Under the pieces are notes generated by a model. The model was not told the origin of the DNA, searched no databases, and was given only the letters and a program-made list of their open reading frames with translations. DNA of 64,000 bases, taken from the NCBI GenBank assembly GCA_026936335.1, contig JAPMXV010000001.1, positions 62,001-126,000 of the forward strand, in the 5' to 3' direction. Source of the DNA: Mantamonas sphyraenae STR306 (Eukaryota; Protista; CRuMs). Position numbers and translations under genes: made by a program. Positions 28,386 to 51,699 of this stretch are shown here, in pieces. Within the stretch, counting starts at the first letter, position 1; each line of letters starts with the position of its first letter.

Positions 28386-31048
28386 TCATGCACTGGGACC
28401 CTCCGACTCGGCTTCGAGCACTTGCACACCCTCGACGGCAGGTACGTCGGCCCAGACCATGGCACCGCTGGCAAGCTTGGCGACAAGGTCCACGATGATG
28501 TCGACGTGGGCACGCACTTGACCCATGCTATCGCGCTCGCGCAGAGTGACAGTGTCGTCCTGACATGTGGTAAAGTCGACGGTGACACCAAAGGGAATGC
28601 CAATCTCGTCGGTACGTGCGTAGCGGCGGCCAATCTTGACGCCGCTGTCGTCCACGCGCACCGAAATGCCAGCGTCCTTGAGCTTGCGTGCGGCAGAGGC
28701 CACAAAGGGCTCAAACTCGACGTTGTTGCTCAGAGGCAGCACGGAGCAGGTGATGGGGGCCACCAGGGGCGGGAAAGCCAGCACACCGCGCTGCTCGTCG
28801 TCCTTGCGGATGTAAAAGACATTCTCAAACAGACAGTACAGGATGCGGCCGATGCCAAACGACGGCTCCACCACCGACGGCACATACTTTTCCACATGCG
28901 TGGTGGTCTTGGTGGTCTCGATCTCCACCGCATCGGGCTTGATCTCGAACGAGTTGCCATCCACGTCCACGTTGGCCACACCATCGGCCTCCAGCGTGGT
29001 TTGCAACTGCTTCACAGCCGCCTCGTCCAGGCCCTCGAGGTGGGCCATGACACCCTTGGCTTCCTTCTTGAACAGCTTGCCCAGCACCTTTTTCACTGGT
29101 TTGCACGTGAGCTTGGTCTCCACCAGAGGCTCGGCGAGGTCGCGTGAGGCCACCTGTTCCTTACCTGTGGCCTCGGCATGCTTGGTGAGGTCGTAGGCCG
29201 AGCGGTCAGCGCAGCCGACACACTCGATCCAACCGTAGGAGCACTGGATCTCTGCGTCCCAGCAGTCGCAGGCATAGTGGGCCATTTCGTGTTGCAAATG
29301 CTGGCGGAAGCGCAGGCGTTTGCTGGGCACACCGATGGCCTTGAGGAACTCGCTGGTGCGTGCAATGAAGTAGCCCAGGGTTTGGTTGTCCACCACGCCG
29401 TCAGCCACCGCATCGGCCATGGTCATCTCCACCGTGCCCTTGTTCGACAGCTGGTTCTCTCGAGGCAGCAATGTGATGGGAATGTCACAGATGCGCTCAA
29501 ACTTGGGGTGGTCCTTCTCGTTGGGGTGCGTAAAGTGTTCGATCTCGGCCATTTCAAATTCGCGCACACGCAGCAGACCCGAACGCGGAGCAATCTCATT
29601 GCGGAACGCCTTGCCCACCTGAGCGGCGGCAAAGGGCATCTTGAATTGGTTGAATTCCAACAGGCGGCGGAAGTTGACAAAGATGCCCTGGGCAGTCTCG
29701 GGCCGCATGAAACCCTGCAGATCACCGCGCGGACCAATGCTCGTGGCAAACATCAGGTTGAACGGGAAGGCCTTGCCCAGTGGGTTGCCACCCTCGGGAG
29801 ACTTGACATCGTACTCCTCAAACTTGGCGTCCAGTTCCTCGCAAGAGTAGCAATCGGCCTGGGCCATCACCAGGTTCAGCTCCTCACGCTGCTCCTTGCT
29901 CGTTGCCGTCGCCAGAAGCTCCTCCATCTTTGCTTCCAACAGGTGGTCGGCACGGTAGCACTCGCCCGTCACCTCGTCCTGCACCATGTTGTCGTTGAAG
30001 CGCGACACATGACCGCTTGCCCTGCGAAAAATGCGAGGAGCGGGTGAGCGAACTCGGCTGTGTTGGTACAGGGTGCAATGCCTGTGCCCTCTCTCTCTCT
30101 CATTGTCCAACCCTCTGCCTCTCTCTCTCTCTCTCTCTGATCCCACGAAAAGACAACTCACTTGAGCACAGGGTGGGGCGTGACACACACGCTTTCAATC
30201 TCAAGCATGCTCTCTTCCAGCACAAACCAGTTGCGCCACAGCTCCAGCAGCTTGTTCTTCACCGCCGTACCAGCGGGGCCGTAATCAAACAGACCAGCAA
30301 AGCCTGTGTGTCACGTGGGCGTGTCTGCAATGTCAGTCTGGGTGGCTCTGGGGTACCCACAAAGGACTTGGTGCCCCCTTCCGACGCCACTCTCTGTGTC
30401 CCGCGCTCCGATCCGCGCGCAATGGCAGCAAGAAGCCACAGCAAGCACCAATGTGTGCTCCTTGTGTGCCACACTCCCTTCTCTCTCCACCAATCATGAG
30501 AAGATCTGCACACGCGGAATCCGTCGAACAGGACGCAAGTTCCGGCGAAAAATGCACTGGCTGCTGGGCGCCTCGGCCCAACCGGGTACAGCGCATGCAC
30601 AACGCTCTCACTCTCCACCGGGAGGCAACGGGAGGCGGGAGGGGCATGGCCAGACACCAACACGTAACGACGAAACAGAACACGTACCGCCATAGATTTC
30701 AAAGCTTGGGGCAAAGAAAAATCTGCGGGATGGGAATGTTGTCAGTACCAGGCAGGGTTGCGACACAGAGAGAAGAGAGAGAGATATAAACAAGAAGAGA
30801 GGTGCGGAAACTGACCGTCGCTTGAGCAAATCCTCGAGATCGCTGCGGTTCCAGCGGTCGCCGAGCTTCTCGACCATGCCGGCGAGGACGGCCTTGAGCT
30901 GCTTGAGCTTCTCAACCTCCTGGGCCACCACTTCGGCACTCTCGTTCTTGGACTTGAGGGAGCGCACAAGGTCAGCCTGGGCCTCGACGGCCTGGCGTGC
31001 CTCTTCCATGGCTTGTTCCGTGGGTTCGTTGTCTTCGACAGTCGACAT
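28386..31048 (-). CDS. GARS1: Glycyl-tRNA synthetase (eukaryotic homodimeric type) with N-terminal WHEP-like domain; exons 31048-30816, 30722-30688, 30303-30162, 30021-28386
   Basis: Spliced translation gives RRFFFAPSFEIYGG, GLFDYGP, SGHVSRF, FNLMFATSIGP, MRPETAQGIF, FRNEIAPRSGLLRVREFEMAEIEHF, EMAHYACDCWD, EPSFGIGR and IGRRYARTDEIG. All three GT-AG introns are phase-compatible. Confidence 0.97.
30088..30138. repeat. Two (CT)n/(GA)n microsatellite tracts in GARS intron 3
   Basis: ctctctct runs near 30088-30101 and 30119-30138. Confidence 0.85.
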
Positions 31049-31307
31049 GTCGCGTTTTCGGGTGGCAGCGCAGACGCACATGTCCACACGTGGACAAGCA
31101 GCCCTCCCTACGTCAGCGTCAAGAGTGCCACAGAGGGAAGTGGGTGTTGGGGATGGGAGTTTGAGGGGGGGTGTTTCATGGAATTTGGGTCTTCCTGCGC
31201 TTTCCGAGGCAGGAGAACCAAGAAACCAATCCCCAGGCAAGCACCGAGCGACAGCCTTCCTTTTGCAACAACAAGCAAGACCAGAAACCAAGAACCACCC
31301 GGAGCCC
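31049..31307. promoter_or_regulatory. Putative bidirectional promoter between GARS1 and the RRM gene, containing a G-quadruplex-type motif (31135-31171)
   Basis: 259 bp lie between the divergent ATGs. The + strand reads GGG-AAGT-GGG-TGTT-GGGG-AT-GGG-AGTTTGA-GGGGGGG. Confidence 0.5.
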
Positions 31308-32791
31308 ATGAGTACCAACGATAGCAACGAGAGCAGCGGCACGGAAGGCCAAAACACCATCAAGGTGTTTGTTGGCAACCTGCGCTTCAAGACCACACCC
31401 GAGACGCTCAAGGAGGTGTTTGCAGCACACGGCAACGTGTAAGTGACAACTGACGTGGCACACATGCATACGCATGGGCGTAGAGTCGTGCTGGCCGGTG
31501 TGCGAGCGTGTGGACTCGTCCACGGGCGCCACAGGGACGGGAGCCCGGCGGCGCAGCTTGGGGAGCTTTGCCGGGAAAAAAACGGCAGTTCGCTGACGCT
31601 TGTTTGTGGGCACCCACGACACACAGGCTGTCTGCAAACATCATCTACCGTGGCACGCGCTCCAAGGGCTACGGCTTTGTGGAGTACGGCACCCTCGAGG
31701 AGGCCGAGGCTGCGATTGCCAAGCTGAACGGCACCGAGATTGACGAGCGCGAAGTCAGCGTCGAGCTCGCAAACCCGCGCGAGGTGAGTTTTCTCGTGCC
31801 TCCTTTTGTACTGTGCACCCTTCCACAACGATGCGCTTTTCGCTGCCTCTGCACACATCATGCCCACGCGCGCGTGCACACCCCCGCTCTGCCCGCTGAC
31901 TCCAACGCATGCCCGACCCCGCCTTCTGCAACGAAAACTCGCTGGGGTGGAAAACACCCTCTTCTGCGCTTGGCCAAAAATCGTGTGCCCACCCTGCTTT
32001 TTCTTGCACCACAGGTTTCCGAAGAGAGTGAGTTGTCCCACGTGCATCCCTTGGCGAAGCCTCATGTCCCTCTGCACAGCATATGCCATCTTCCCCTCCT
32101 CCCAGCTCGCCCCTGTGGCGCTGCGCCGTGTGCAGGGAAACTGCGCCAGAGGGCGGGCCCCTGCAAAAAAACGTCCTGGACACACCGCTGCGTTTCCGCC
32201 CTTGCTGCGCAAGACCACATGGCTTGGAGACGCAGCAGCGCACGTGTGTCAACAGCATTTTGATGCACAGCATTGCGTTTCCCCCGTCTGCGCTTCCTGC
32301 CTGCACACGCGCTTCCCACGTACACAACCTCTGACAAGAATCCGCTGCCCTGCGTGTGACACCCTTTCTCAGAGAAACCGGCTGGCAAGAAGCGCAAGCC
32401 GCGACGCCGCAACCGCAACGCTTCGCAGCAGGAAGGCGAGGGTGCGTCTGGCGATGCCGAGCAGGACAACGGACGCGACAAGCGCGATGGCCCGCAGCTG
32501 AACGCTGATGGTCACCTGCACACGTCCAACGCCTGCTTCATCGCCAACCTGCCCTTTTCGCTGGAGAGCGACGCCCTCAAGGAGCTCTTTGTCGAGTTTG
32601 GTGTCAGCACCGCGCGCGTGGCTCGCCGCCGCACTGGCAAGAGCAAGGGTTACGGCTTTGTCGAGATGCAGACTGCCGAAGGCCAGCAGAATGCCATTGC
32701 CCAGATGGACGGCAAGGAGGTCGACGGACGTGTCATTTCCGTCACGGCTGCCAAGCCCCTGGAGGCTGGAGAGTCCAGCTCCGACGAGTAA
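31308..32791 (+). CDS. Two-RRM RNA-binding protein; exons 31308-31438, 31627-31783, 32015-32027 (13-nt microexon), 32373-32791
   Basis: RRM1 has VFVGNL and SKGYGFVEY; a basic linker KPAGKKRKPRRRNRN follows; RRM2 has CFIANL and SKGYGFVEM. Splice phases match with the CAG|GTTTCCGAAGAGA|GTGAGT microexon. Confidence 0.88.
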
Positions 32792-33146: not shown

Positions 33147-36009
33147 ATGTCCGCTCCGCAGCGCGTTTACGAGCTCAATCCCGAGTGGTTTGTTTGCCAT
33201 GACCCGAACACCGGCAGGGACTTTTATGCCCACAAGGCCAGCGGCAAAGTGCAGTGGAACGCACCTGAGTACGTTTTGACGATTGCGCGAGTTTTCGTTC
33301 CCCGCCGCTCACACCCCACCCGCCGCCTTCACACGGCACAGCCCTGCACCCGAACCCGAACCCGAACCCGAGCCTGAACCTGAACCTGAACCCGAGCCTG
33401 AAGAACCGGCCAAGCCCAAGGAGAGGTACACCGAGCTGTTTGACACAAACACCCAGCGGCCGTACTACCTCCATGAGGCGTCCAAAAAGACTCAGTGGAA
33501 CAAGCCCGAGTCCGGCGTGCTCACCATCAAGAAGACGGGCCAGGTCATCGACCTGGACACGGGCGACATCATCACCCAGGGGGTCTCTGCAGAGGTGCAG
33601 TCCAAGCCCAAGAAGACTGCTGTTGCCGCCCTGCAAAAGGCCGAAGGCGGCGGCGGGGACGTCAGCGCGCCAGCAGCTGGTACGCCAACCAGTCCGAGAT
33701 GGCAGACATCCAACAGGCCCTCGACGCACAGGAAAAGGCAGAGGCTGAAGAATGGATCCTTCCTGAGGGCTGGATCAAGGTACGTGCGCCTATGTTTTGC
33801 CAGGCCCCAATTTGGCAAGCAGCCGAACCCTCTCGCTTTTTGCCACTCAGGCCAGCCCGTTTTGTGCCCCCTTTCCCTACACCCACGCAGCTCACACACT
33901 CACCACTCTAACCCGCTCTCCCTGCCTCACCTCTCCATCTCCACCCTGTGCAGCTCTTTGACAAGAACACGGGCAAGGACTACTACGTCAACAAGGGAAC
34001 GGGCAAGTCCCAATGGCGGTTGCCTGAAGGCGCCACCAAGAAGAGCGCCAACACCAACACCAACACCACCACCACCACCACCACCAACCAGACCCAGCAG
34101 CAGGCCGCCGAGCAGCAGCCCAAGCAGCCCAAGACCCAGGAATCCTCCTCGGCCGACGACACCGTACGTTTTTCCAGTTGCTGGAGCCCGTTTTTTTGGT
34201 CGCCTCTCTCTCGTCATCCCTTTCCCTCTCCCCACCCAACTACAACTGCCCGCCATTCCTTCCTGCATCCCCGTCTCCCTTGCTCCTTGACCATCCTGCA
34301 TTTGTTGCTCGCCTTGGCACCTGCCCTCTGCCCCGTGCACACGCTAACATAACCACTGCACCGCCACACACGCCTTGACCCAAACCACCCCCCAACCTGG
34401 CACAATCCCGGTATTTTACGTTTTCCTCCTCCCCTTGCCCTGCCCTTTCCCGTCTCGTCCTGCCCTGTCTCGTGCCTCCCTGGCCTGTCCCGCTCTCCCA
34501 CCTGTGTCCGCGTGCGTGCTCCTCCTCTGTCGTCGTGGCTACCTCTGCGGGTGTGCCACGACTGAAAAACACAGATCGACACCACCAGCACAACCAGCTC
34601 TACCACCAGCTCGGGCTCCACGAGCACATCTGCAGGCTCGTCGTCTGGCAAGCCCTTGCGCTCGCAGTCAGACCTCATCTCCTCCGGGCTGGTACGTACT
34701 CCGAGCATGGTGGGAGGCAAACGTGGCTCCATGCCGGGCCTTCCGCCACAGCTTGCTTCTGACATCCACAAATTCAAGATGGATGACTTTGCCAGTTCCT
34801 TCTTCCAGACCAAGAAAAAGGGTCTCTTTAAGAAGAGCATGCCCGTCGACGAGCTCATCTCCTTCAACCCCAAGCCTATTTCCAGGCCCCTTTTCAACAA
34901 CCTGCCCAAGGATCTCACCAAGGAGGCCGTCGAGGTCCACAAGCTCATTCTCATCTACTGTGGCGACAGGTCGGACAACAAGAAGCGCACCCCGCAAGCC
35001 GTCGCCAAACTTATTATCCGCAAAGGTTTCCAGGCCGCCGACCTCCGCGACGAGATCCTTCTCCAGCTCGTCAAACAGTCCACAAAGAACCCCAACCCGT
35101 ACGTGTGTGCCACCAACCCTCCCAATGCTCGTCCCTTCTGCCATCTCCGTCTCCCTCACACACTCACCCAACCCCCCCCCCCCCTTCCACAGCGAGTCTG
35201 AACTCAAGGTCTGGGCACTCATGGGCCTCGCATGCTCCACCTTCAAGCCCTCGTCCATGTTTGAGGCCTACTTTGTCAAGTCCCTGCACGGTGTGATGAG
35301 CGACGCCGACGAGGAAAAGATCATGCTCAGCGCAAAGTATGCGTACCGCAAGGTGCAGAACATGATCAAGGTCGGCCCGCGCAAGACCATGCCCACCGAC
35401 TTTGAGTTTGCCAACGCCGAGGAGGCCCCCTTTGACCCCTTTGTGTACGAAAACTCCATCGAAGACATCATGGCCCGCCAGCAGCAGGGTGAGTTCTCGG
35501 GCGAGCCCGTGCCCCATGTGCTCCCGTTCCTTACCGAGGCCATCCTCGAAAACGGTGGCGAGTCCCAGGAGGGCATCTTCCGTGTCCCTGCAGATGCCGA
35601 CGAAGTCCACTCCCTCCGCCTTCGCATCGACAAGGGCGACTACTCCATGGAGTTTGACGAGCCCAATCTGCCTGCTGCTCTCCTCAAGCTCTTCCTCCGT
35701 CGCCTGGCGGAGCCCCTCGTGCCTGACGACCTGTACAAATCGGCCATCCAACAGCACTCCAACCCCAAGGGCTGCCTGGAAATCATGCAACAGACCACAG
35801 AGGTCTCACAGGCGGTCGGTGCCTTTGTCATCGACTTTCTCCGCAACCTGTCCCAACACGCGGCCAAGACCAAGATGGATGAGGACAACCTGGCCATGGT
35901 GTTTGCTCCCTCCTTCCTCCGCTGCCCCGAGGACAACCCACAGATGATCCTCGAAAACACCAAACTCGAAAAGGACTTTGTCCGCAACCTCATGGACGTC
36001 CTTCAATGA
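33147..36009 (+). CDS. ARHGAP39: WW x3 - MyTH4 - RhoGAP protein (ARHGAP39/Vilse family); exons 33147-33268, 33342-33779 (frameshift about 33655-33658), 33954-34163, 34575-35098, 35193-36009
   Basis: Three WW-like domains (WFVCHDPNTGRDFY..VQWNAP; YTELFDTNTQRPYY..TQWNKP; LPEGWIKLFDKNTGKDYY..SQWRLP). MyTH4 motif LILIYCGDR...LRDEILLQLVKQSTKNP. RhoGAP motifs EGIFRVP (arginine finger), AALLKLFLRRL and TKMDEDNLAMVFAPSFLR. Confidence 0.88.
33348..33402 (+). repeat. Coding hexanucleotide repeat (CCNGAR)n encoding a (Pro-Glu)n linker
   Basis: cccgaacccgaacccgaacccgagcctgaacctgaacctgaacccgagcctgaa. Confidence 0.85.
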
Positions 36010-36123: not shown

Positions 36124-39100
36124 ATGTCCCAGTATGATGAGGCCATGGCGTTGATCGAGGAGGACTCGTATATTTCCTCCTCGTCTGACGACGACGCTGA
36201 CGAACTCACCACGGTGGCCATGCGTGGGCGACCCGCGGGCAACAACACCGGCGGCTCAAATGCCGCTGCGCGCCGTCCCGCCGCCGTGCGTGTCCAGATC
36301 AAGCGCTCGTCAGCCTCCCCGTCCCCACGCATGGGCCGTCGTTCAAGCCGGCCTTCCCTCAATAGCTCACGTTCCTCCTCTCCGGGTGTCATGGTCAGCG
36401 GCGTCCTGCTGAACGAGCCGGCCATGCGCCGCCTCTCGGCGGCTTCCGATAGCCAGGTCTCCACTCCAGGAGACGAAACCCCACCTCCTCCTCCAGAGGA
36501 AGAGGATGAAGACGATGGACACGAGGAGGACGAACCCAACAATGACATGGACGACGACAACGACGACGACGACGACGAAAACGACGGGGATGTCCCCGAC
36601 CCGCCGCCGCCGGAGGAACAGGACGAGGCGGAGGACGACCAACCAGGGACACCACCCACCGAACTCGCCCAAGACAGCGACGACGACATCGGCGAACCAT
36701 CGGATAGCGATTCAGACATGGATAGCAGCGACAGCGACGATGGAGGCGTCGTCTCTGTGGCTACAAAGGCGAGGCGTACAGTTCCCGGTCAGCCTGAAAC
36801 GCTTTCTTCTTCTCGCCGCTCCTCGACGTCCAAGGCTGCTGGCCAAGCCCCCGCAGGCCAAGCCACAGTTTCCACTGGCCAAGGCACGTCCCCCACTGCC
36901 TCGACGAGCTCCACTGCCTCTACCAAGGGCGCACAGGACGCGGGAGCCCAATCTTCCAGAGCCGCGCCCGCGGACCGATCCAAACGCCGCCCCAGCGCTC
37001 ATCCCCTCCAAGCCTCCAGGCCCTCTCTGATGAGCAACATGTCGCCTGTGCACGACGATGACGAGGATGAGGAAGAGGAGAGGAGCCCCACCCGCTCTCT
37101 GGAGAGAACTCGCAGTGTGGTGTCTGGCACCATCCCGTCGCAACTCGACCAGCTCGTCTCTTCCCTCACCTACAATGACGACGACGAAACGTCCGACAGC
37201 GACCGCGACTCTGTTGAAGATCTGCCCGTAGACACGGCCCTTGTGTCCCAGCCATCCAGTGGCCGCAGCAGCGTCGACAACGACACAGACAACGACCTGG
37301 ACGACGCAGACATCGCCATCATCAACTATGTGCGTTTTTGCAATCACCCTCGCCCCATGCGCTTCACACTCACACACACTCACACACTGACACTCAACAC
37401 TCACTCCCTCACCCTCACCCCTGCCCACCTCAGGATCGCGTCGAGCGCTTGCGACTCGGCAACTCTGCGTTCCTCCAACACAACACAGAGGATATGCCCT
37501 TCTTCACCGCAAACCTTGCGGCACAGCTAAACACAGAACATGCGCACGACGACCACAGTCGACAGCGCCCCACTGTACACGACCTTCAAGCCGACACAGA
37601 AGCGGCAACGTCCACACGCTCTTCTCGTGTGCGTTTCGCCACCGACGACGACGACGACGACGAAGATTCCGCAAACGGCGTCTCTGCAACCACAGTCTCT
37701 GATTCCAAGGCGGGTGCAACCAACGCCAGCAGCAGTCGTCACGGCTCCTCCTCCTCCGCCGCAAGCTCCTCCACGAGCCGTAGGACGAGCACGACCGAGG
37801 TGTCCATCAAGGACAAGAACGGCCATACAGTCATCCCGCGTGGGGCTTTGGTCAACTCCGTCGCCTCGTCGCGCAACTCTCGCCTCAGTCGTCTCAGTGT
37901 CACCTCCATGAACCAATTGCGCACAAAACGGGCCCCGGGTATTTTCGCAGGCAGGACCGGAGGCATCAAGTTTGTCGACATCGGTGATGTGGACGATGAG
38001 GACGAAGGCGATGAAGTCGAATCCCTGTGGGCCCCATCCGACCAGACCGGAGGCGCCGAACAGGAGCAAGCTCAAGACTCTGCCGCCGGCACAGGTCCTG
38101 CCTCTGGCGACCAACCCACCGAGCAGGACCACATGACTCAACATGCAAAGGTTGTGCAAAAGGCAAAGGTGCTGATCCACCAGTACGACCTGCCCCTGTA
38201 CCTCGGTACCATCGAGTCATTCTGCATCTACCTCGGCGAGATTCCCAGTGCAAGTGACCCCAAGATCATCGACCTTGTGCATGACTTTGACATGCTTGTC
38301 CTCGATCCCATTGCCGTCGCCGGTGGCGTCATGCACTCTGTCCAACGCCACAGCAACACCGTCCTTCTCGCACGCATCCCCATCCGCCAGAACGGCCGTC
38401 TGGTGCCCCACAAAAACCTGAAGAACCAGATCATGCGCATGCTCAACCAGGGCAACATGGATGGCGTCTACTTTGCCGACCTCGAGGACGAATCTCTCGA
38501 CCCGGCAGACGTCAACGCCCTCCTCACAGCCGTGCTCAAGGATGTGGCCGCCAAGCGTGACCACGACGATTCCATCCAGGCCAAACGCGGTATCTTTGTC
38601 ATTGAGGGTGGTGCAGACATCCTCTACGGAGAACTGCCAGCCAAAGTTCACGGCGCCGTCATTGTCAACCCCACCATGAACCGTGACGGCTCCTACAAGC
38701 TCATGCACGGTCTCGAGTACCAAAAGCAAAACGCCTTTTTGAAGAAGCTGGTGTCATTCAACCAGTTCCGCGTCGACTTTCGCATTTTTGCCCTCGAAGT
38801 CGTCAACGACGAGGCCATGGTCCAACCCGAGGTGTACACTCGATTTGTGGACTACTGTAACACCAACAACACCATCGGCTGGGTGCAAGTCGACCCCTTT
38901 GCCACAGATCTTAACCAGGTGCTGCCCCTCAACATGGAACCCGTGGGTTGCATGGCCCTCATGGGCCTGCCCGAGCTCACCACCCTCTTCAAGGCCACCG
39001 AGCAGCACGAAAAAGCCCCACGCAGGGAACGCACAAAGAGCAGACGCGCACGCTTCGGTCACTTTGACTGGGCTGCCATTGTCGAAAACTACGGTGGCGT

Positions 39101-42100
39101 CACTGACCTCGAGGAAACGCTCGACCTCATCTTCCAGACCATCCTGGAACACCGCGACGACTTTCGTGGTGTTTGCCCCAACCACAAACCATTCCATGGG
39201 TGTGGTCGCATGCATAGCCTCTTTCGTGATACCGTCATGTATGCGCTCGAGGAAATCACAAAGATCTATCCGCGCCAGCGCATCGTGTTGGAACAGACCT
39301 GCTACAAACGCCTTCTCGAGGAGATTTACGCTGTGAAGGACGTCGAACAGGTGCTGCCCGAGCTCATGGATCTGACAAACTCGCCACGCTTTCCCAATGC
39401 AGACCGTGAGAGCAACGACTGGAAGATGCCTCTGCGCCCCAGTTTGGAGGAGGCCGGCAGCCGCACGGGCGTCGGTCAGTCCGGCTCCTCTGGCACACAG
39501 ACACCGGTGAACCAAGACAGGGTAAACGGGTCTTCGGGCAGCCATGTGCAGGTGCCCGACATGAAAGGAGTGCACGAGCTGTTTTGCGAGGTCAACACCA
39601 TGCAGTACGACCGCGTAGTGAAGAATGTCATCGATTTGCGCGACCGAGGCTTGCTCAACAATCTGAGCAAACCCGTGGAGCAGGAAATCTACACAGGAGA
39701 CCCGTTGAAAAACAGCTCCAAGGTCACGCCCAGTTTGAAGCTGCTGGAAATCGTCGCGCAGCTGCGCAGCGTGCTGGTAAACCCGATGGCCTTTAAGCAT
39801 GTGATCAAGCCGTGCTTGCGCGAGGGTGAAACCATCACCAACTGTGCTCTGCTGCACTACCTGGATCGGCTGGCGACCAGCCTGCAGACACGATCCTCTG
39901 TCGACTCGGAGCTGCTTCCGGAGCCGTACATGGAGGTGCAGCTGTGGGAGTGTGAACCCACAGCGCTCATGTATGCCGATGTCGTGGACGACAAGCATTG
40001 GTGGGGCGTTAGCAACCGCGAGTTTTCCGACCAGGTGACGCACATCTACGTCGCCCGCAACCACCCCAACACTGCCGAAGCTGTAATCCACTGCTACATG
40101 CAGTATTACGGCTTCAGCCATCAGCAGTGTGTGATCATGGAGGCACTTGTGTCACGCAATGGCCCAGCAGACAGCATGGGCAACCGCTTGTACAAGCTTG
40201 CATCCGATCGAGTGCTCATCGAGTGCAAACAGAGTTCTGTGCGCCATCTTCTCCACCTGATGCAGGGCACGTCGTACGTGTTCAACAAAGTGCCGCGCAT
40301 GAATCTGCCGCCCCTGCTGTTTACGGCCGTGCTCGACCTCGCCGAAGAGGTGCACATGCTGTGTTACAACACACTCATGGACGATGACCGTCAGGTCAAG
40401 GCCACCATGATTGCCGACCTGTTTGAGCGCTCGGAGCGCCTGGAGCGTGAACAAATGGTTCACGGCAAGGAGCTGCTTGCGCCAAAGCTCAGCAAGGAGG
40501 TGCAGATGATTGAACAGCGTCACGACCTGCTTGTGGACGAGGTGACGGAGCTCGTCACGCGTGCTGCGTGGAACGCATCCGACCTACGCGTGCTGCTGCT
40601 CCTCGTGCGCACAGCCACCGCTGCCGTCCAAACATTTGGCACCGTGCCGCCCGGTCTGGCTGTGTTTTCGCAGCTGGTGCAGATGGCTGGACGCAAGAAT
40701 GCGGTGGACGAGCTGGAGATTGCCACGCGCGACGGCAGCGCGTACCCTGTGACCGAGCGCGATGTGGCCACCATCTACTGCGAGTTCAACGGCTACACTG
40801 AAAAGGACATCCAGCTCGTGTTCAATTCGTCCAAGTTTGACATTGGCGGTGTCATTTACGACCGAGTGCGCAAGAGCATCTGCAAGGAGAACCCCGACAT
40901 CGAAAACTTCCCCTGCTTCCAAGAACGCAAGAGCTCGTATGAAAAGACCGCCAAGGACGCCCTGAGCGTCAAGACGTACTTCAAAAAGTACATGGACGGC
41001 CTCTTCTTCATGTTCCCCATGCTGTTCAACTTTCTCCTGGTAATGACGTTCGGTGTGGGCATCTTTTCCTCGCTGTACATGAGCATCGAGCACCAGTCCA
41101 TGGTGGGCTACTCCATCTTTGTGGGCCTGATCTTTGGCGGAGCCATGAACCAAGGTCTGGCTGTGCTCGGTGGCTTGCATTTGCACCAGTGGAGCTATTC
41201 GCTGGTGATGTACATCCACGTGCGGATGTTCTTTGCGGCGCTCGCGCTGGTCACGTCTCTGATTGTGGTCACCGGCGCCTTCCTGCTCATATGGTACAAG
41301 TTTGTGGACGTGTGCCTGTTTGCCGGTTATACCCTGGGATTTGCCGCCATGATTGTGGCCACAGGCGCGCTTGTGAGTTCGCATCGCAAGAGCATCTGGC
41401 GCTCAACAGAGGGCAAGACGGTGCTGCTTGGCCAGCTTGCCACGCTGGTCTTTGTGGTCATCATGTACTTTGGCGTGGGTGTCATCGACAAGGACGTGTA
41501 CCCGACCTGGGGTGGCTGGGTGTATGTGGCCGGGTTGTTTGTGAACGACGCCGTCCTGATTGCAGGCTACGTGCGCTCCATCCACAAGAACACCAAACTG
41601 CTGGAGCACCTGCGCCCCGTGAGTGCTGCCCGTGTGTTTGAATGGTACGCCAAGCGCATGCAGGCGCGCACGGAGAAGGAAGGCTCGAATGTGGGCGAGC
41701 CGCAGCTGCACCAGGTGCCACCCAACGGCAAGGGTATGTCGCCGCAGATGCTGGCTTCAGAGCTTTCCAAGTGGTATGCTCGCAGGTACGGCTTCATCAC
41801 ACACATCCAGGACGTTGTGGAGGTGCAGGCCTTCTTCAATGCCATGGCCAAAAAGGAGATGGCTCGTTTCGAGCAGGACGCGTGGGATGCCTACTCGGAT
41901 GCGTGCCAGGAGGCGCTCGACGGCGGCCTGCTGGCTGCGCTGAAGCAGGTGCCGGACGTGATTGCCGACAAGATCGAGTCGTATCAGATGGAGGAGGACC
42001 TGGTGCATTGGTTCTGCCTGCTGCAGGAAAAGAGCCGCCCCAAGCCGTGGACCGAGACGTGGGACAAAATGCTCAGCGACGCAAAGACCGAGTATACGCT

Positions 42101-45100
42101 GAAGCAAAAGACGGACAAGCTGTTGCGTGGCGGCCTGCAATGGGATTTGGTGCGCGCCCAGGTGGCGTACGGCTGCATGTACTTTCTGCTGCTGTTTGTG
42201 GACCGTCCTCTGCAGTGGGTCAACGGCGAGACGCAGATGTTTGTGCCCACCAGTGCCTACGAGGTGGGTGTTGTGTGGGCGCTTGTCTTTCTGCTCATTT
42301 GCGTCGCAGCACTGGAGCCCGTCATGACGCGCATGATGAAGCACGAGACCCTGGCGCGCGACATGCGCCTCAAGGACGAGGAAACCATCGCCGAGATGGA
42401 GGCTCAGTACAAGCGAGAGAAAAGGCGCACCTATTTGTCCGAACTGCGCGGCTACATGGCCAACATGCTTGTGGCGGCCATCCTGGCAGCTGGACTGATG
42501 ATTATCAGCATGGCCATCCTGTCCCAGTTGCCCAACGCACCGCTGCCATTCACGTTTGACTTTTTCCTGGGTGTCCTTCAGGTGTTCCCCTTTGCAGTGG
42601 CTGGCTATGTGGGGTTCGCCATGGGGTGTTTCAACACGCTGTTCCTTGGACGTGCGTACGTGGGTCGCGTGGCCTGGTCGCTCGTCTACGCCATCCTCCT
42701 TGCCTGGGTGGCGGGTGGTCTTGCGTTTGTCTTTGCACCACGCCAAAACAATCTGGCCAGTCTGTCCATTACTGTGGGCGGTTGGATGTTCTTCTTGCTC
42801 ACACTGCGCTTGGAAATGGGCCGCTGGAGTGCCAATCTGATGACAGTGGACGACAACTCGCGTGAACTGTACCTCAATCCGCAGGAGCAACAGTTCCTCA
42901 ACACCAGCGGACAGAAGTACGTGGGAAGCCACACACCGTCGCCACAAGTGATGAGCCGTGTGGTGCAACACCTGCGCGAGCTGGAACAGAACCACGCCGA
43001 TGGAGAAGTGTCGAGCGTGTCGTACGGTGGTGCGTTGGGCAAGGCCGTGTCGTCGCTGTTTCGTGTGGCCGCGCGACGCCTGGAGACGCTGGAAGAGGAA
43101 AGTGTGATCAACATGGCGTACCCTTTGTTGATCGACCAGATGCGCCAGATTGAAGATCTGTGGAACAAGAACACCATCCGAGTGGTTCTTGTGCCCAGCG
43201 ACCACCTCTTGGTGTCGCACAACCAGCGTCTCAGTGCCCTCTCATACGTCAAAGAGGACTACAGTGTCAATGTGTACGTGGGTGTCGAATCCGAGGTCAA
43301 GCAGTCGCAGCTGGTGCGACGTGTGGCCGAGGCTGTGCTGCACGAGGCTCTGGAACGCTTCTACGGCCTTCCCCACAGTGAGGCCATGGCTGCCGAATTC
43401 GTGCTGGGTGAAGACGTGAACGATCTGCCCGAGCGCGTGAAGCACGAAATGTCTGTGCTGCCCCAGAGCCAGCTGCGTCTGTTGAAACTGCGCACCAATG
43501 CAAGCGTGCTTCAGGCGCTCTTGTTTGGACCCATCAATGGCATCGAGCAGACATGGCCAGAATTGCCACGCTATGTCCGCCGATTCCTGCTTGGGTTGGT
43601 GGTGAGTGTGGACCCTGCGTCTGCACACACGTCGACGGGCGTGGGATCCTGGATCGAGGCGTGCCTTGGCATGAGTGCCGAGGACTTTGAGCTTGCACAC
43701 AATTGGCTCTTCCGCAAGCAGGACGAGGACGCAGGAGACATGGTTGTGGAGCAGCGTCTGGCACGTGCACAGATGTTGGCCCACATTGCCGTGACGGTGA
43801 AAGACGACGTGCGCGTTTACCTCACCATGAACAGAGCCAACCAGCGATCGGACGAGCACGAAGGTCTGCGCCAGGCGGTGAACTACGATGTGGGCATGAG
43901 TCTGAGCGAGGACCCGTTTGCCGACTTGACGTCTGTGCTTGCTGTGAAGGAAGCGTCGCGCACACGCAGCTTCTGGTCGCGGATGCTGGACAGCCTGGAA
44001 GTCTTTATGCGCATCCAGTTCTTGGCCTTTGTGGGCGACACGTCGTTCCCTCGCGAGTGCCATTATGCGCGCAACAACGCAGAAGAGGGCTTTGGCTGGC
44101 TGGGCAACCTGCTCTCGTACATCATGCTGGTGGAGTACTGGTCGCAGAGGGTTTTGGTCAACAGCAGTGTTTGGTTTGTGCTGACAAGCATGCGACCAGA
44201 CATCCACCACCTGAAAGAGCAGGTGTACAACGGCCTGCAGCGAATGGAGGTGTGGGCCAATGGCCGCAAGCTGTCTGTCAAGTCCCTGGATCCGGCGGGC
44301 CAAAGCACGTCGTTTGTGATGTGGGACGACAAGGAAGACACGGTGCTCAGTGTGTATCGCGTGCCGGGGCTGGTGGACATGAACAAGGCGCTGATGGTCG
44401 ACGGCCACGACGCCATGGTTCTGGGCGGCGAAAACAACTTTCGCATCGCCATGCAGGCTGCTGGTTTGACCACCAAAGTCGTGCAAAAGGCACGCTACCT
44501 GCGAGACGGGCGCCTGCATTCCGTGCAATATCGCGAGAAGAAGCCGTCGACAGCATTCTTCTCGTACGGAAAGTCACGGAGTGAGACCGGAGTGCGCATC
44601 CCGGTGGAGAAGCTTGTGTACGCGGGGCAACTGGACGAGCCGCCTGAAGACGCAACCCGAGTGCAGGAGTTGTGGTACTACGACGCAGCGGGGCGCATCA
44701 CACGCGGCGTGTTGTACCGCAGACACCACGGCAGTGGCGAGCGCATCCAGATCAACGTGTCATTCCTGATTGAGGGCCAGCTGCATGCGTTGGAGCCGTT
44801 TACGGGCTCGGTGATGTTTGAGAACGTGCCGTCGCGCACGGGGTACAGTGGCACACTTGTGGTGCGCTACCACGCGTTCACGTCGTACCCGTGGAAGAGC
44901 GTGTGGTCGGAACAGGGCACGGGACGACGTGTGATCACCAGTTTCCGGTACAACCACATCAAGCACCCGACGATGACGTCAGAGCTGGTGGTGAACGAGA
45001 CCACGCGTCAGCCGTGCGACACGCCCGACGTGGTGGCCGAGGACAAGCACCTGTACAAACTGTTGGCCGTGGGTCGCCGTGGCCTGACCATCTACGAAGA

Positions 45101-48100
45101 AGACGTGATGGCCAAGCTGCCTGCGGTGCGACATGTGTGGGAGAACCTGGACCTTGGAAACAAGGCACGCGTCAAGTTTGGCGGATCGCCAACGTACGGT
45201 GAACGCAGTGTGTACGCACGCAAGTACCCTGTGTTGCAGGCGAGATTGGCTCTGTGGACGCTGTGGAAAACAAAGGCGCTGGAGGGGTCGTTTGCCATGT
45301 TGATGGACGAAAACCTGCTGCGCACGGAGCCTGTGCTGAAGCGGTACTGGTTCCTTCGCGACACGCTGAACGTGGATGCGGCACGGCGGGAAATCGAGGA
45401 GAATGTGGACGAAATCGGCCCTGCGATCCAATCGCAGGAGAACCCCGGGTTCAGCTCGAACCTGCTGACGCGCGTGTCCGACTTGAAGATTATGGGCCGC
45501 GGCTTTGACTCGCACGAGGTGTTTGTGCTGGAGGAGGAGGTGACGCGCAGCAGCATGTCGCAGGACAAGATTATCACGGCGCTGGGTCTGGACAGCGGGA
45601 CGTGGCCGGCAGACAATGGTGGCGTGGCGTCGTGTCGTCGCGATTTGGTCGACCGTATTTCCACGGTGCGCTGGTCGCACATCAGCGAGACGGCCAACGC
45701 GATGAAGCTGTTCAACTATCAGGTGGTGAAGAACGTGAACAGCATGGTGATTGTGCCGCTGTGGGGCAACGACGTGGCTGGGCCGAACGAGTACGTGCAC
45801 ACAGACATTCAGTACACGGCTTTGGCAGCCAAGACGCAGCGCACGACGAAAAAGGTGATCCGAGAGTACTTTGTGCCCACGCTGCGGCGTCTGGTTCGAG
45901 GATGTGCTGGCACGCGCGAGCGCCTGACGCGCGAGGACCTGGAGGAGTACACCACCACCATGGTGAACATCTACGTGTACTTTCAACACTACGATTGGTA
46001 CCGCACATGGCACGACACGCAGACTGTGAATGCTTGGCGGCAGGAGTGGCTTCAGTACACGCTGAACAGCTACAAGGTGCTGCAGGTGGTGGACTCGGAG
46101 CGTCCGCGTCTGGTGGACATCGACGCAGCCATGTCTCTGTTCACACACTTTCTGATGCCCTTCACGGCACCCATCCCGCAGGTGGAGGTTGCGCAGGCGT
46201 CGCACCATGGCATCCAAAGTGTGTTGGGTGCAATTTGTAGGCGCCTTTGGGGCTCATCGTTCCTGGTGTGGGACCACGGTATGCTGTGGCGCGAGCGCAT
46301 TCGTGCGTTTAGCGAGACGGATGCGTTTACACCATTTGTGCGCAACGCCATGATTGGGTTGACACGCGTTTGCTCCTCGGTGGCTTACTTCAACGCCGAC
46401 TGCGTGACGTCGTGCTCGAGCACGGGCAACCCGGAATGGGAGCTGCGTTTGGGTCTGAAGTGGGGCATGGAGCGCACGGAACTGCGCTGGAAGATGAACC
46501 CAGTCATCAACGGCATGGAAACAGACCGCTTCTCGCCGCAGCGAGGCACGGAGGAGATGCGTCCGACGGCAGTGATGCTGTCGCATGTGTACGAACTGAA
46601 GGACGTGAAGAACGCAATCATGGCCACCGATGTGATTGTGAACAAGTTCAAGGTGACCGACTTTTTCCTGCTGGTGTACGGATCGCTGGCCAAGGATGCG
46701 CAGTATGTGAGCGAGTGCCGTGAAATCATCACTGCCAAGGATTTGGGCCGCAACGTGGACCTGGCCGGCCTGGGCAATGCGCCCAAGGTGGTGCCTCGCG
46801 GCTGGATCTTCCTCAACTCGAGCAAGAGTGAGGGTCTGCCCCTTGCGCTGGGCGAGGCCGGTCTTGCGGGTCTGCCCGTGGTGTGCACAGACGTGGGTGG
46901 GTCGCAGGAGGTGGTGACACAGGGCAAGTACAGGTATGGAGCTGTGGTGCCACCGAAAAACCCAACGGCGCTGGCACGTGCCATTTTGCACACGCTGGGA
47001 ATGTGCGGCGACTTGCTGAGCATCACACAAGTGCCGGACGAGAATGGAGTGATGACACCGCTGACGCAGCCGGAGCTGCAGCTGGACGAATGTTCGCCGT
47101 TCAACCGCAAAGGCATCGACATCACAGAGCGAATCTATGCGGTGAGCGACTACAGACGACTGCTGGGCATGCGTTTCCGCACGTACGTGATGTCGACGTT
47201 TGGCATGGAACGCTACCTGCGTCAGCACGAAGCGCAAATGGTGGCCGGGGCGCTGAAGTACAGGCTGCGCAAGGCACAGTGCAGGGTGGTGTGGCGTGGA
47301 CAGGTGGCCGAGGCGTCGCACGCATCGTTCTTCCGCCACTTTGTGACCAAGAGCGAAGAACGGCTGTTTGAAGACGACATGGAGATGGAAGAGGAGACGC
47401 TTGCACGCGTGCAACAGATGGGCGACGAGGACGAGGTGGGCTGGGAGGGCATGCTGCGTCTGCAATTGGAGGTGCGCCGACTGCAGAACGAACTGTTGCA
47501 GCAGAGCAACATGACGCAGACGTCTGTGTCGAGCAGGCTCAGCCGCAAACGCAACGATCGGTCGTTCACTGTGGATGTGGAGGCCTTGCGAGACAGTGGC
47601 GACCACAGGCAGCGCAGGCTGTTTGAGAGGCTGTCCAACGTGCAGACCATGGCCTCGCAGAGCATGCTGGGTACGCCCGCGGCAGGTGGGTCGAGGCGCA
47701 TGAGCGAGTTGGTGAACGCGGCCGGTGAACCGACGTCGTTGCTTCAGAGTGTGCTGAGTGACTTGGATGAAGAGGACAGTGGGGCAGAGCTGGCGCACAG
47801 CCATTCGATGGACAGCACGGATTCGCCCATGCCGCTGCGATTCCGAGATTCGCCCGTGGGTGTGGGTGGCAACCGCGGCGGACCGGCAGTGGTGACGCCG
47901 CGCTACACAAGGCCGATGAACGAAGATGGGGTGGAAGAGGAAGAGATTGAGGTGATTGAGGTTGTGGTGGAAGACAGCGAGGGAAGCCGTGCAGGAACAC
48001 CCGGGAACACCGGGAGCAGGGCGAGACAGGTCCAGGACACCACCCAACCAGCAAAGGGGGAAGGAACAGACACTGGGTGTGCCATTGGCGCAAGGGGCAC

Positions 48101-49762
48101 GTCACCAGGCGCTGCTGAAGGGGCGGCGCAGGTCGCGGCCGCAGTTGTCGCTGTTGGATGTGCCTGTGGACGAGGAGGAAGACGGGAGCGTTGTTGCACT
48201 GGGCACACGCTCGCCAAGGAGGCTGTCTGGCGTGGACGAGCTGGGCAACGATTGGGACAAGTGGAACGACGCAGGCGTGTCGCTGATCATGCCATCGGTG
48301 TCCACTGCGGCTGACGAAGGCGACGGGAAAATCAGCAAGGCGTCGTCGACCCTTGCCAGTCCGTTGCGTTCGGCTCGTTCGACGTCAAGACCCGGACCGA
48401 TGCGTCCGCCTGCGGGGCTGGGACGTCGTCGCTCGAGTGTGGCTGCTACGACGCCGCTGTGGTCGGCAAGTTCGACCAACGAAAAGCTTGCGTTCCTGAA
48501 TCCGGCGGCGTCGGAGGATGTGGGCGCAGGCGGCGGAGTGAGTCCGAGCAGATCGATGCGACGAAGCAGCAGCGCAAGCAACGAGGTGGATGTGAAACGT
48601 TGGGGCAAGTTGCGATCGATGCTGAGCAGGTCATCGACGCCGACAACGTTGTTGGGACAGGTGCGCACAGCAGGATCGACGCCGATGGACAGTTCGACGC
48701 CGCAGCCGTCGACAGTGAGCAAGTTCCAGCTGGACATGGTGGAAGAACTGGAGGACGAAGGGTCGGATGTGGGTGTGCCAGAGTATGTGGAGAACAGCGT
48801 GGGCAAGGTGGGCTATGTGAAGTTGGTGCGTGTCCTGTCGCTGTTCCAAGGCTCGATGGACCGTGTGATGTCTGCGTTGAAGGAGGCAGATTGGCCAGTG
48901 GGGACGGAAATGGTGCGCAAACTGGTGGGAGCCCTGCCCGATCCGGACACGGTGGCCGCAATTCGCCGCGAGATTGCAGCCGCAGGCCTGACCGAAGACT
49001 CGCCCGAACTCGTCCTGCCGCTGCGTTTGGTGTTGCAGGTGGATGCTTTGGGCGACGGAAGGGAGCGTGCGCGCAGTCTGCTGTACCACAAGAAATTGAT
49101 GCAAGGACTGACGGAGGCGGAGATGAAGGCCGAGCTGTTGGAAACGGCGTTTGGAGAGATGGTGTCGTCACGCACGCTGTCCGAGGTGCTGGAGCTACTG
49201 GGCAATGTGATGCGAAAGCAGGTGACCCCTGCCGAAGGGGTGGAGGTGCCAGCGGGAGGGTTTGAGTGGTCGCAGCTGGCGACGCTGGACACGCTCAAGA
49301 CACGACGTGGACGCACGACAGCGCTGCAGTTTGCCCTGACGATGAGCGAGCAACAGTTGGACGAGGACGACTTTTCGGCGGAGATCAGCCACCTGAAGGA
49401 GGCTGCAGGCTGTGGGTAGTGAGTGGACGGTGCAGATGGTGCAGCGACTGGGCAAGTACCTGAAACCTGTGGAGTGGCACCTGAGCCATGAGGTGGAGGA
49501 AGAGACGGACGACCAGTTTTGGAAGTGGATGATGGAGAACGTGCAAGCACACCGACATCGCCTTGTGACGGTGGCCAACACCATCGACAAGATCAACCAG
49601 GGATGCCGCAACTTTGTGAGCGACTTTGTACGCAGCGACGACTCGGTGGACTTTAGCCATGTGTTTGGCAACCTGTGGGCGTTTGCAGAGATGTGGAACA
49701 CGGACGAGAATGATGATGGCGCGGACGAGGAAGATGGAGAGGCTTGGAGTGTGATTATGTGA
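36124..49762 (+). CDS. Giant (about 4,510 aa) multi-pass membrane GT4 glycosyltransferase, Gtb3/PelF-like, with C-terminal FH2-like domain; exons 36124-37329 and 37434-49762, frameshifts at about 48003-48005 and 49408-49409
   Basis: Acidic disordered N-terminus; phase-0 intron gtgcgt...cactgac...cag; SFCIYLG...FDMLVLDP; two clusters of hydrophobic TM segments (about 41000-41580 and 42150-42830); DSGTWP..GGVASCRRDLV; ASHH...WDHGMLWRER (PelF/DUF3492-like); GT-B EX7E motif NSSKSEGLPLALGEAGLAGLPVVCTDVGG at about 46815-46900. Confidence 0.8.
48790..49720 (+). other. Degenerate formin-homology-2 (FH2)-like domain
   Basis: Motifs in FH2 order and spacing: LVGALPDPDT (cf. L..FLP..EE), RERARSLLY, AFGEMVSSRTLSEVLELLGNVMR (cf. 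S..L..LL..IL..GN.MN), AGGFEWSQLATLDTLKT..GRTTALQF (cf. A.GF.L..L.KL.D.K....TLLHY), EISHLKEAA and, after the frameshift, DDQFWKWM and VFGNLWAFAEMW. Confidence 0.7.
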
Positions 49763-49786
49763 GAGGCATAAAGGCACAGATGGTAC

Positions 49787-49874: not shown

Positions 49875-51699
49875 ATGAGCAGCGAAGACGGCGGATTTTT
49901 GCTGCTAAGTGGCAAAACGGTGGCCCAAAAGGCCGGCGTGGGTGTGAAGGAAGCTGAAGTGGCGGTGGTGTCGAGCAAAAAGGGAAAGAAGGGAAAGCGA
50001 AGGAAGAAGAAGGCAAACGGGGATGTAGAGGCAAATGGAGAATCACAGCGCAGGCAGAGTGGGGTGGAGGACGTGGAGCGAGAATTGGGTGCAACTGTGG
50101 TGGAAAGCGAAGAGCGTGCAGACTCGTTTGAGGAGCTCGGGGTGGACGATTGGCTGTGCAAGTCGCTTGCAAAGCTGAACATTTCGCGCCCCACAGCTGT
50201 GCAGACAGCGTGCATTCCGGCAGTCCTGAGTGGTAAGTGGCATGGGAAGTGTGTTGGGCATCTGTAGGGAGGTTGTTGTGGCGATGGGATGACGATTGCT
50301 GACACCTGCGCGCAGGGCGAGACGTTCTGGGCCGGGCGCAGACTGGAAGCGGAAAGACGGCGTCGTTTGCCGTGCCCATCTTGCAGGAGCTGGCATCAGA
50401 CCCCTACGGCGTGTTTGCAGTTGTGTTGACACCCACCCGGGAGCTGGCACTGCAGATTGCACAGCAATTCGACTCGATAGGCGAGTCGTTCGGTGTGCGC
50501 TGCGTGACCATCATCGGCGGACTGAGTAAGTGTCGCGTGTGCACACACACATGGATGCAAGGAAGTGAGAGAGCCAACGCCCAACGCCCCCGCCCACGTT
50601 GTTTCCCCACTCCTTCGGTGTTTCCACTGACACATGCACCTGCAATAGACATGACGCGGCAGGCAATGCTGCTGGAGAAGCGGCCGCACGTGATTGTTGC
50701 CACTCCCGGCCGCTTTGTGCACCACATGCAACAGGGCACAGCGGGATTGGATCAATCGCTTCAGCGGGTGCGCTATCTGGTGTTGGATGAGGCGGATAGG
50801 CTACTGAGCGAACGTTTCGAGGAGCAGATGGCGTACGTGCTAGAAGCGCTGCCCAAGGAGTTTCCCGTGGCTGAGCGACGTAAAGGAGAGGCACAGATGG
50901 TGATGCGACGAAGGCAAACGCTGCTGTTCTCGGCCACCATCACACGCAGCCTGGAAAGTGTACAGCGAGGGGCGCAGGTTGCGCCGTTTATGTTTTCGGC
51001 GTGCGACGAATATGCGACGGTGGAGAAGCTGCGGCAGGAGTACCTGTTCATGCCTGCCAAGGTGAAGGATGTGTTTCTGGTGCACGTGCTGGACACCCTG
51101 GAATACGAAAGCGGCATTGTGTTTGTGTCGACGTGCCAGTACGCACAGCTTGTGCACGAGATGCTGAAGCTGTTGGGATTCAGCAGTACGCCGTTGCACT
51201 CGCTGCTGACTCAGACCGATCGCATCAAGTCGCTGGGACGGTTCCGATCGTCCAAGGTGAAGTTGCTTGTGGCCACCGATGTCGCCAGCCGAGGTCTGGA
51301 CATTCCCACGGTGGAGTTGTGGTGAATTACGACGTTCCATCCGTGGCCAAGGACTACGTGCATCGTGTGGGCCGCACAGCACGTGCGGGCCGCAGCGGAC
51401 GCGCGTTGACTCTGATCTCGCAATACGACGTCGAGCTGGTGCAGTCGATCGAAGCACTGGTGGGCAAGAAGATGACGTTGATGGAAGTGGACGAAGACGA
51501 GGTGCTGGACGACCTGAATCGTGTGAGCAAGGCCAAGCGGGGGGCCAAACTGGTGATGTTTGAAAACGGCTTTGACGAGCGCAAGGCCAAGCGCAAGCGG
51601 GAGAGGGATGGCAACAGGGACAATGACGGCTCGTCGTCAAACCAGGGCAGTGGGCACGGGACGGGAGGAGGAGATGTGAAGCGGAGTCGCGCGGAATGA
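49875..51699 (+). CDS. DDX49: DEAD-box RNA helicase DDX49/DBP8; exons 49875-50232, 50316-50525, 50649-51699, frameshift at about 51319
   Basis: Q motif [45 protein letters not shown] (DBP8-typical), [27 protein letters not shown]. Adding one G gives VELVVNYDVP...[13 protein letters not shown]. Confidence 0.9.

What the first reader, a model, noticed from the sequence alone, without database searches (positions are those of the whole stretch)
47900..49762. Polysaccharide synthase fused to a formin FH2-like domain: cytoskeleton-guided matrix secretion?
Seen: after a long Ser/Arg-rich linker, coding-like sequence continues across a 1-nt shift at about 48004, with no intergenic gap, into an FH2-like domain (GNVMR for GNxMN, conserved Lys in LDTLKT). 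No lasso Trp motif or adjacent FH1 polyproline is evident. The first ATG of the downstream frame (48289) lies inside the upstream ORF. Established: FH2 domains dimerise and bind actin barbed ends, and fungal chitin synthases with myosin-like domains are a precedent for cytoskeleton-coupled synthases. Inference: a previously undescribed GT4-FH2 fusion that tethers polymer extrusion to actin or microtubules, or uses FH2 for dimerisation.
Basis: partly seen in the sequence, partly recalled or inferred. Interest (0 to 1): 0.85.

Follow-up and report, generated by a model that had tools for sequence, protein, structure and literature searches.

The report
Polysaccharide synthase with degenerate formin tail
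In a marine gliding protist, one giant gene joins an enzyme that probably makes a sticky extracellular sugar polymer to a worn-down copy of the actin-building formin domain, which has lost the parts needed to build actin and more likely serves as an anchor inside the cell.

Summary
The fusion is real. Short-read contigs lack one base at 48003 (three runs) and at 49408 (four runs). Both frameshifts are therefore assembly errors, and one frame runs from the GT4 domain to the stop at 49762 (about 4,510 aa with a predicted first exon). The genome statistics match Mantamonas sphyraenae. The enzyme is a Gtb3/PelF-like GT4 synthase with intact motifs. The tail is FH2-derived (Pfam E 7e-10; ESM 0.95), but it is a pseudo-formin: no lasso, linker or FH1, the actin-binding knob Ile replaced by Arg, GNxxN altered, only the post Lys kept. 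Actin nucleation and ring dimerisation are unlikely. All four allelic changes in the domain are silent, so it looks constrained. A passive cytoplasmic tether (microtubule or filament side) is my best guess and is untested. None of 150 homologs, nor the genome's paralogs, carries FH2; some carry RhoGEF, PH or LIM domains instead. It is known from one species only. No earlier scan note showed this fusion on other DNA.

The parts
36124..37329 (+). Predicted first exon: 402-aa acidic, Ser/Pro-rich low-complexity N-terminus (short acidic poly-Pro runs, far from the FH2; not an FH1)
   Evidence: open frame from ATG 36124, in phase after the intron; no Pfam hit; not covered by reads
37330..37433 (+). 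Predicted 104-nt GT-AG intron
   Evidence: GTGCGT donor, pyrimidine/CA-rich tract, CAG acceptor; removing it gives a 4,510-aa frame; inferred, not read-tested
37434..49762 (+). Second exon: one open frame once two assembly insertions are removed; Gtb3-like body, GT4 domain, linker, FH2-like domain, stop
   Evidence: no splice joints in 44000-49780
41001..42744 (+). Membrane region, nine hydrophobic segments by a crude hydropathy scan; none after it, so GT4 and the FH2-like tail lie on the same side
   Evidence: Kyte-Doolittle > 1.6
45144..47300 (+). DUF3492 + GT4 catalytic region, PelF/Gtb3-like; conserved Lys (46599) and E-x7-E (46830-46856) intact
   Evidence: 33-48% identity to most homologs
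47301..48777 (+). About 500-aa linker: a probable short coiled coil, then Ser/Arg/Gly-rich low-complexity sequence; no PPP run
48003..48003 (+). Extra base in the assembly (run of G); artefact
   Evidence: left out in contigs of X1, X2, X3
48598..48612 (+). RWGKL: sits at roughly the spacing of the first lasso Trp, but the region scores no better than shuffles; at most a relic
48778..49696 (+). Degenerate FH2 core (knob, coiled coil, post, C-terminal helices); no lasso or linker
48829..48831 (+). Arg at the position of the knob isoleucine (Ile in 15 of 16 formins)
   Evidence: ungapped extension of the profile match that starts one residue later
49201..49215 (+). GNVMR, altered GNxxN post motif, preceded by a 3-residue deletion
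49297..49299 (+). Retained post Lys (K or R in 16 of 16 formins)
49408..49408 (+). Second extra base in the assembly; artefact that creates a false stop at 49417-49419
   Evidence: left out in X1-X4; the FH2 profile runs through once it is removed

Best explanation
One gene encodes a membrane-embedded Gtb3-type GT4 exopolysaccharide synthase with a C-terminal pseudo-FH2 domain on a long flexible linker. Shown: single open frame, intact GT4 motifs, FH2 ancestry, loss of lasso, FH1 and knob Ile. Inferred from homology: the GT4 domain polymerises UDP-sugars (probably GalNAc-type) in the cytosol and the membrane region exports the chain. Inferred, weakest step: the monomeric FH2 core no longer nucleates actin but acts as a passive tether, binding microtubules or filament sides, and holds the synthase at a defined patch of cortex or on secretory vesicles.
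For: Single frame. GT4 motifs. FH2 ancestry. Lost features; their role in actin assembly from PMC3192862 and PMC2364705. Constraint: 21 of 27 allelic differences are silent, 4 of 4 inside the FH2 match; codon bias equals that of the GT4 region. mDia2 with the Ile mutated, or made monomeric, still binds and stabilises microtubules (PMC2364705). A non-motile myosin domain tethers a chitin synthase before secretion (PMC3252574). Other protist homologs carry RhoGEF, PH or LIM domains.
Against: No binding data. The domain is at most 24% identical to any formin and on a very long branch (6.7), so any binding surface may be gone. It is net acidic, like the genome's true formins, which gives no positive sign of microtubule binding. 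The mDia2 results were obtained with FH1-FH2 constructs. No ortholog was found, so conservation across species is untested. Only four variable sites support constraint.
Confidence: 0.5

Rival explanations
1. Same real fusion, but the FH2-derived helical bundle has been recruited as a protein-interaction or regulatory module unrelated to the cytoskeleton, for example binding partner subunits such as the catalytically degenerate GT4-deacetylase paralog.
For: Extreme divergence with the fold pattern kept; main actin site lost; a paralog with degenerate GT4 and two Agd3 domains exists as a possible partner.
Against: The post Lys and GF motif are kept; no partner evidence.
Confidence: 0.28
2. The FH2 tail is a decaying passenger from an old gene fusion, with no current function beyond staying folded.
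For: Long branch; absent from paralogs and from all 150 homologs.
Against: No stops or true frameshifts over about 300 codons; the whole core from knob to last helix is kept; 4 of 4 silent changes; codon bias as in the enzyme.
Confidence: 0.12
3. The domain is a working, unusual formin that dimerises (perhaps through the synthase or the linker coiled coil) and caps or nucleates actin at the secretion site.
For: Post Lys kept; RWGKL lies near lasso spacing; one metagenomic formin of 16 also lacks the Ile.
Against: Ile-to-Arg at the knob site, no lasso signal, altered GNxxN, no FH1; such changes strongly impair actin assembly in tested formins.
Confidence: 0.07
4. Two separate genes, or an assembly artefact, create an apparent fusion.
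For: The assembly does have indel errors; no long cDNA read was seen.
Against: Single contigs of X1 and X2 span 44000-49780 with no stop in the corrected frame; no joints; no strong splice donor near 48003 restores the frame.
Confidence: 0.03

Closest known systems
Aspergillus fumigatus Gtb3 (galactosaminogalactan synthase) and its fungal and protist homologs
   Same: Giant membrane GT4 with DUF3492 + Glycos_transf_1 near the C-terminus and the same catalytic motifs; homology along most of the length. [quoted passage not shown]
   Different: About 4,510 aa with an 818-aa tail after the GT4 region (median 57 aa in homologs) ending in a pseudo-FH2. No Sph3 or Ega3 family found in the genome; Agd3 domains are fused to another paralog. 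Gtb3 itself was not aligned by name; Aspergillus and Penicillium GT4 homologs were.
Formins (FH2 domain; Bni1, mDia1, DAAM1)
   Same: Knob, coiled coil, post and C-terminal helices; GN and GF motifs; post Lys.
   Different: No FH1, lasso or linker; knob Ile is Arg; GNxxN is GNVMR. It resembles in extent the crystallised mDia1 core fragment (1v9d, TM 0.63 by query).
Myosin-chitin synthases (Ustilago Mcs1)
   Same: A polysaccharide synthase fused to a cytoskeletal domain that has lost its classic activity and tethers rather than moves (PMC3252574).
   Different: GT2 chitin synthase with a myosin domain, widespread in fungi and tested; here a GT4 synthase with an FH2 relic, one species, untested. 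An analogy, not homology.
Moss For1F (Sec10-formin fusion)
   Same: A formin fused to secretion machinery (PMC5839782).
   Different: For1F carries a class I formin described as an actin nucleation factor and an exocyst subunit; no enzyme.
Bacterial PelF
   Same: GT4 domain similarity (NF038011, E 7.9e-22).
   Different: 78 bits, below the cut-off of 100; PelF is a small soluble enzyme (own knowledge).

Membership tests
Formin (FH2) | FH2 core homology (knob, coiled coil, post) | tested here: met
   Pfam 39 bits over cut-off 34.8; ESM features 0.95, 27 of 30 hits FH2; own profile 40 + 17 bits against 6.8 for shuffles
Formin (FH2) | N-terminal lasso with two Trp and linker (ring dimer) | tested here: not met
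   Lasso profile scores -0.8 bits, 354 of 1,000 shuffles as high; formins in the profile score 65-99
Formin (FH2) | Knob isoleucine (Bni1 I1431) | tested here: not met
   Arg at 48829; Ile in 15 of 16 formins. One alternative gapped alignment puts Val there, but it breaks the helix pattern
Formin (FH2) | GN(F/Y)MN post motif | tested here: not met
   G and N kept, last Asn (16/16) is Arg, 3-residue deletion before it
Formin (FH2) | Post lysine (Bni1 K1601) | tested here: met
   Lys at 49297 aligns with K/R in 16 of 16
Formin (FH2) | Proline-rich FH1 next to FH2 | tested here: not met
   No run of three Pro in the 4,088 aa from Met 37494
Formin (FH2) | FH2 fold | tested here: inconclusive
   Model with formin alignment: pLDDT 85.5, top 24 PDB hits all formins, but biased by the alignment; single-sequence model pLDDT 46, no match
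Formin (FH2) | Actin nucleation or barbed-end tracking | not testable with these tools
   needs biochemistry
Gtb3-like GT4 synthases | DUF3492 + GT4 domain with Lys and E-x7-E | tested here: met
Gtb3-like GT4 synthases | Large protein with multi-pass membrane region before the GT4 and full-length homology to fungal members | tested here: met
   nine hydrophobic segments; alignment over residues 704-3259 to top homologs and 815-3257 to chytrid proteins
Gtb3-like GT4 synthases | Accessory GAG genes (Agd3, Sph3, Ega3) | tested here: inconclusive
   Agd3 domains present in a paralog; GH114 not found; the Spherulin4 search had no positive control; not clustered with this gene
Gtb3-like GT4 synthases | Makes alpha-1,4-GalNAc/Gal polymer | not testable with these tools
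   needs enzymology or glycan analysis
PelF (NCBIfam equivalog) | Score over the curated cut-off | tested here: not met
   78 bits against 100

The most novel reading that the evidence does not exclude
A formin FH2 core has been domesticated as a monomeric cytoskeletal anchor that positions a galactosaminogalactan-type synthase to lay adhesive for gliding. It would be one of several independent captures of cytoskeleton-linked domains (FH2, RhoGEF/PH, LIM) by protist Gtb3 homologs, paralleling myosin-chitin synthases.
Probability: 0.3. Interest if true: 0.8.

Novelty: new variant of a known kind. Interest (0 to 1): 0.56.

Why it matters
The architecture was not found in any homolog or paper searched. 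If the tail is an anchor, it gives a natural lasso-less, Ile-less FH2 for separating formin actin assembly from other formin functions. It also gives a testable link between cytoskeleton and matrix secretion in a deep-branching gliding flagellate whose adhesion is unexplained (own knowledge). Practically, the assembly hides the gene behind two false frameshifts, so gene models for this genome are likely split here. Importance is limited by the single species and the lack of any functional evidence.

Tried and rejected
Programmed frameshift or intron at 48003/49408: rejected; short-read contigs lack the bases, show no joints, and no strong donor restores frame at the first site. Single-sequence searches with the FH2 piece found nothing in 5.8 billion proteins or 1.84 billion representatives; PDB sequence search gave only DAAM1 at E 0.3. 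Single-sequence AlphaFold model was uninformative. ESM Atlas gave no hit for the last 106 aa. No FH2 in 150 GT4 homologs by Pfam annotation or by two formin profiles. Paralogs on C31, C59, C36 end without FH2. The tree could not name a donor formin. Five paper searches for this fusion, for protist Gtb3 homologs or for Mantamonas formins gave nothing relevant. Left out: database search and folding of the joined, read-through protein. All database searches and folds were run on the pieces by reference. The joined model was built only inside scripts from window.fa and scored against sequences already fetched; the piecewise scores support the same conclusion.

Full report
Source. The genome has 25,061,354 bases in 78 contigs, and one contig is 300,753 long. 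These match the FALCON assembly of Mantamonas sphyraenae: 25.06 Mb, 78 contigs, N70 300,753, built from PacBio RSII reads and polished (PMC10492846). The identification is an inference from these numbers. Mantamonas is a marine gliding flagellate of the CRuMs group.

Observation. The GT4 frame runs 37338..48314, a second frame 47956..49419 and a third 49412..49762. Pfam gives DUF3492 and GT4 domains in the first, FH2 at E 7.2e-10 (over the cut-off) in the second, and FH2 at E 0.0085 in the third, covering profile positions 90-274 and 283-371. ESM features of the second piece are FH2-like: 0.95, with 27 of 30 hits FH2.

The frameshifts are assembly errors. Public short-read contigs laid on 44000-49780 lack one base at 48003 (X1, X2, X3) and one at 49408 (X1-X4), with no splice joints. 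X1 and X2 span the whole stretch in one contig. Removing the two bases gives one frame of 4,088 aa from Met 37494 to the stop at 49762. A predicted first exon (36124-37329) and a 104-nt intron extend this to 4,510 aa; that part was not read-tested. The assembly shows similar one-base breaks in a DEAD-box helicase near 51320 and in a canonical formin on C27. These runs come from the same study as the assembly, so they correct it but are not an independent population.

Transcription. The tool labels all runs 'DNA?'. X3 is probably the poly-A RNA run. It carries TruSeq adapter ends, the paper's RNA library was TruSeq, and its longest contig is 20 kb against 169-278 kb for X1 and X2. This is an inference, and mate-pair libraries can also carry such adapters (own knowledge). 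X3 contigs tile the stretch with one-base gaps at variable sites and bridge both corrected positions. That fits one unspliced transcript but does not prove it.

The enzyme. The GT4 region finds 150 homologs, mostly at 33-48% identity, in fungi, ichthyosporeans, algae and metagenomes; named close ones include Fabomonas tropica and Physarum polycephalum. Homology covers most of the length. The conserved Lys and E-x7-E are intact. Nine hydrophobic segments lie at 41001-42744 and none after, so the GT4 domain and the tail share a side of the membrane, presumably the cytosol. This is the architecture of Gtb3, the putative galactosaminogalactan polymerase and exporter (PMC9860509). The genome has a second intact copy (C31) and a third with degenerate GT4 motifs fused to two Agd3 deacetylase domains (C59). 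This makes a GAG- or Pel-like polymer plausible. GH114 was not found, and the Sph3 search was uninformative.

The tail. A profile of 16 full FH2 domains (three from this genome, 13 from metagenomes) aligns from 48832 to 49696, through the second corrected base. The pieces score 40 and 17 bits apart and 70 joined; the best of 2,000 shuffles scores 6.8. What is missing matters. The upstream 94 residues score no better than shuffles against a lasso-linker profile (354 of 1,000), although RWGKL lies near the spacing of the first lasso Trp. The residue just before the aligned block is Arg, where 15 of 16 formins have the knob Ile. GNxxN reads GNVMR after a 3-residue deletion. The post Lys is kept. 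There is no PPP run after Met 37494. The knob Ile and GN motif are among the most damaging sites in fission-yeast formins (PMC3192862), and loss of a lasso Trp makes mDia2 monomeric and over 250-fold less active on actin (PMC2364705). With a formin alignment, AlphaFold gives pLDDT 85.5 and Foldseek returns formins in the top 24 rows; this is biased by the alignment. The single-sequence model was poor. The joined domain was not folded or searched in the databases.

Constraint and spread. Of 27 single-base differences between runs and assembly, 21 are silent, including all four inside the FH2 match; third-position GC there (0.76-0.77) equals that of the GT4 region (0.78). The numbers are small but point to purifying selection. 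The FH2-like branch is very long (6.7) while the GT4 branch is ordinary (0.8). No homolog has FH2, and single-sequence searches find no relative of the tail. Other homologs carry a C-terminal RhoGEF (P0006, P0120, P0144; one clade), an internal PH, N-terminal LIM domains (P0107), or Agd3 with EGF and filamin-type repeats (P0005).

Mechanism. Shown: one frame, intact GT4 motifs, FH2 ancestry, loss of the dimerisation and main actin-binding features. Inferred: the enzyme makes and exports an exopolysaccharide, and the tail is a monomeric pseudo-FH2 that does not nucleate actin (about 0.9). For what it does instead I favour a passive cytoskeletal tether (0.5), because Ile-mutant and monomeric mDia2 still bind microtubules and because the non-motile myosin domain of Mcs1 tethers a chitin synthase (PMC3252574). 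Rivals are a non-cytoskeletal interaction module (0.28), a passenger (0.12), a working formin (0.07) and separate genes (0.03).

Verdict. It is built like a Gtb3-type synthase and passes the sequence tests for that group. It is not a formin by membership: lasso, Ile, GNxxN and FH1 fail. The architecture appears undescribed, within the limits of the library searched. It is a new variant of a known kind, seen in one species.

Noticed in passing
G000:C59 about 38.7-56 kb, minus strand (L013, L014, L097-L099): 5,411-aa open frame joining two Agd3-type deacetylase domains to a Gtb3-like body whose GT4 motifs (Lys, E-x7-E) are lost: a pseudo-glycosyltransferase-deacetylase fusion. P0005 has a similar Agd3 + GT4 fusion.
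   Followed up: partly
P0006, P0120, P0144 (L101), P0107: Metagenomic Gtb3 homologs with a C-terminal RhoGEF domain (three proteins of one clade), an internal PH domain, or N-terminal LIM domains.
   Followed up: partly
window 51310-51330: DEAD-box helicase broken by a one-base shift in a conserved motif; probably another assembly error (not read-tested).
   Followed up: partly
G000:C27:60010-60018 (L003): Canonical formin with a one-base shift inside FH2; probably an assembly error. The C31 GT4 paralog (L011 about 1030-1800) also changes frame without an obvious intron.
   Followed up: partly
window 7-27743: Two overlapping giant frames (5,495 and 3,780 aa) that probably form one protein of over 9,000 aa with SBBP/PQQ-type beta-propeller repeats and a C-terminal Peptidase_S74 (intramolecular chaperone) domain; frame change near 16400-16490.
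   Followed up: partly
window 34375-36009: MyTH4 + RhoGAP gene ending 114 nt before the predicted start of the synthase gene, same strand.
   Followed up: partly
window 28386-32218, minus strand: tRNA synthetase with WHEP and class II anticodon-binding domains (glycyl-type by domain set; own knowledge).
   Followed up: no
window 36400-36600: Acidic poly-Pro runs in the predicted first exon of the synthase; could bind profilin, EVH1 or WW domains, but not in FH1 position.
   Followed up: no
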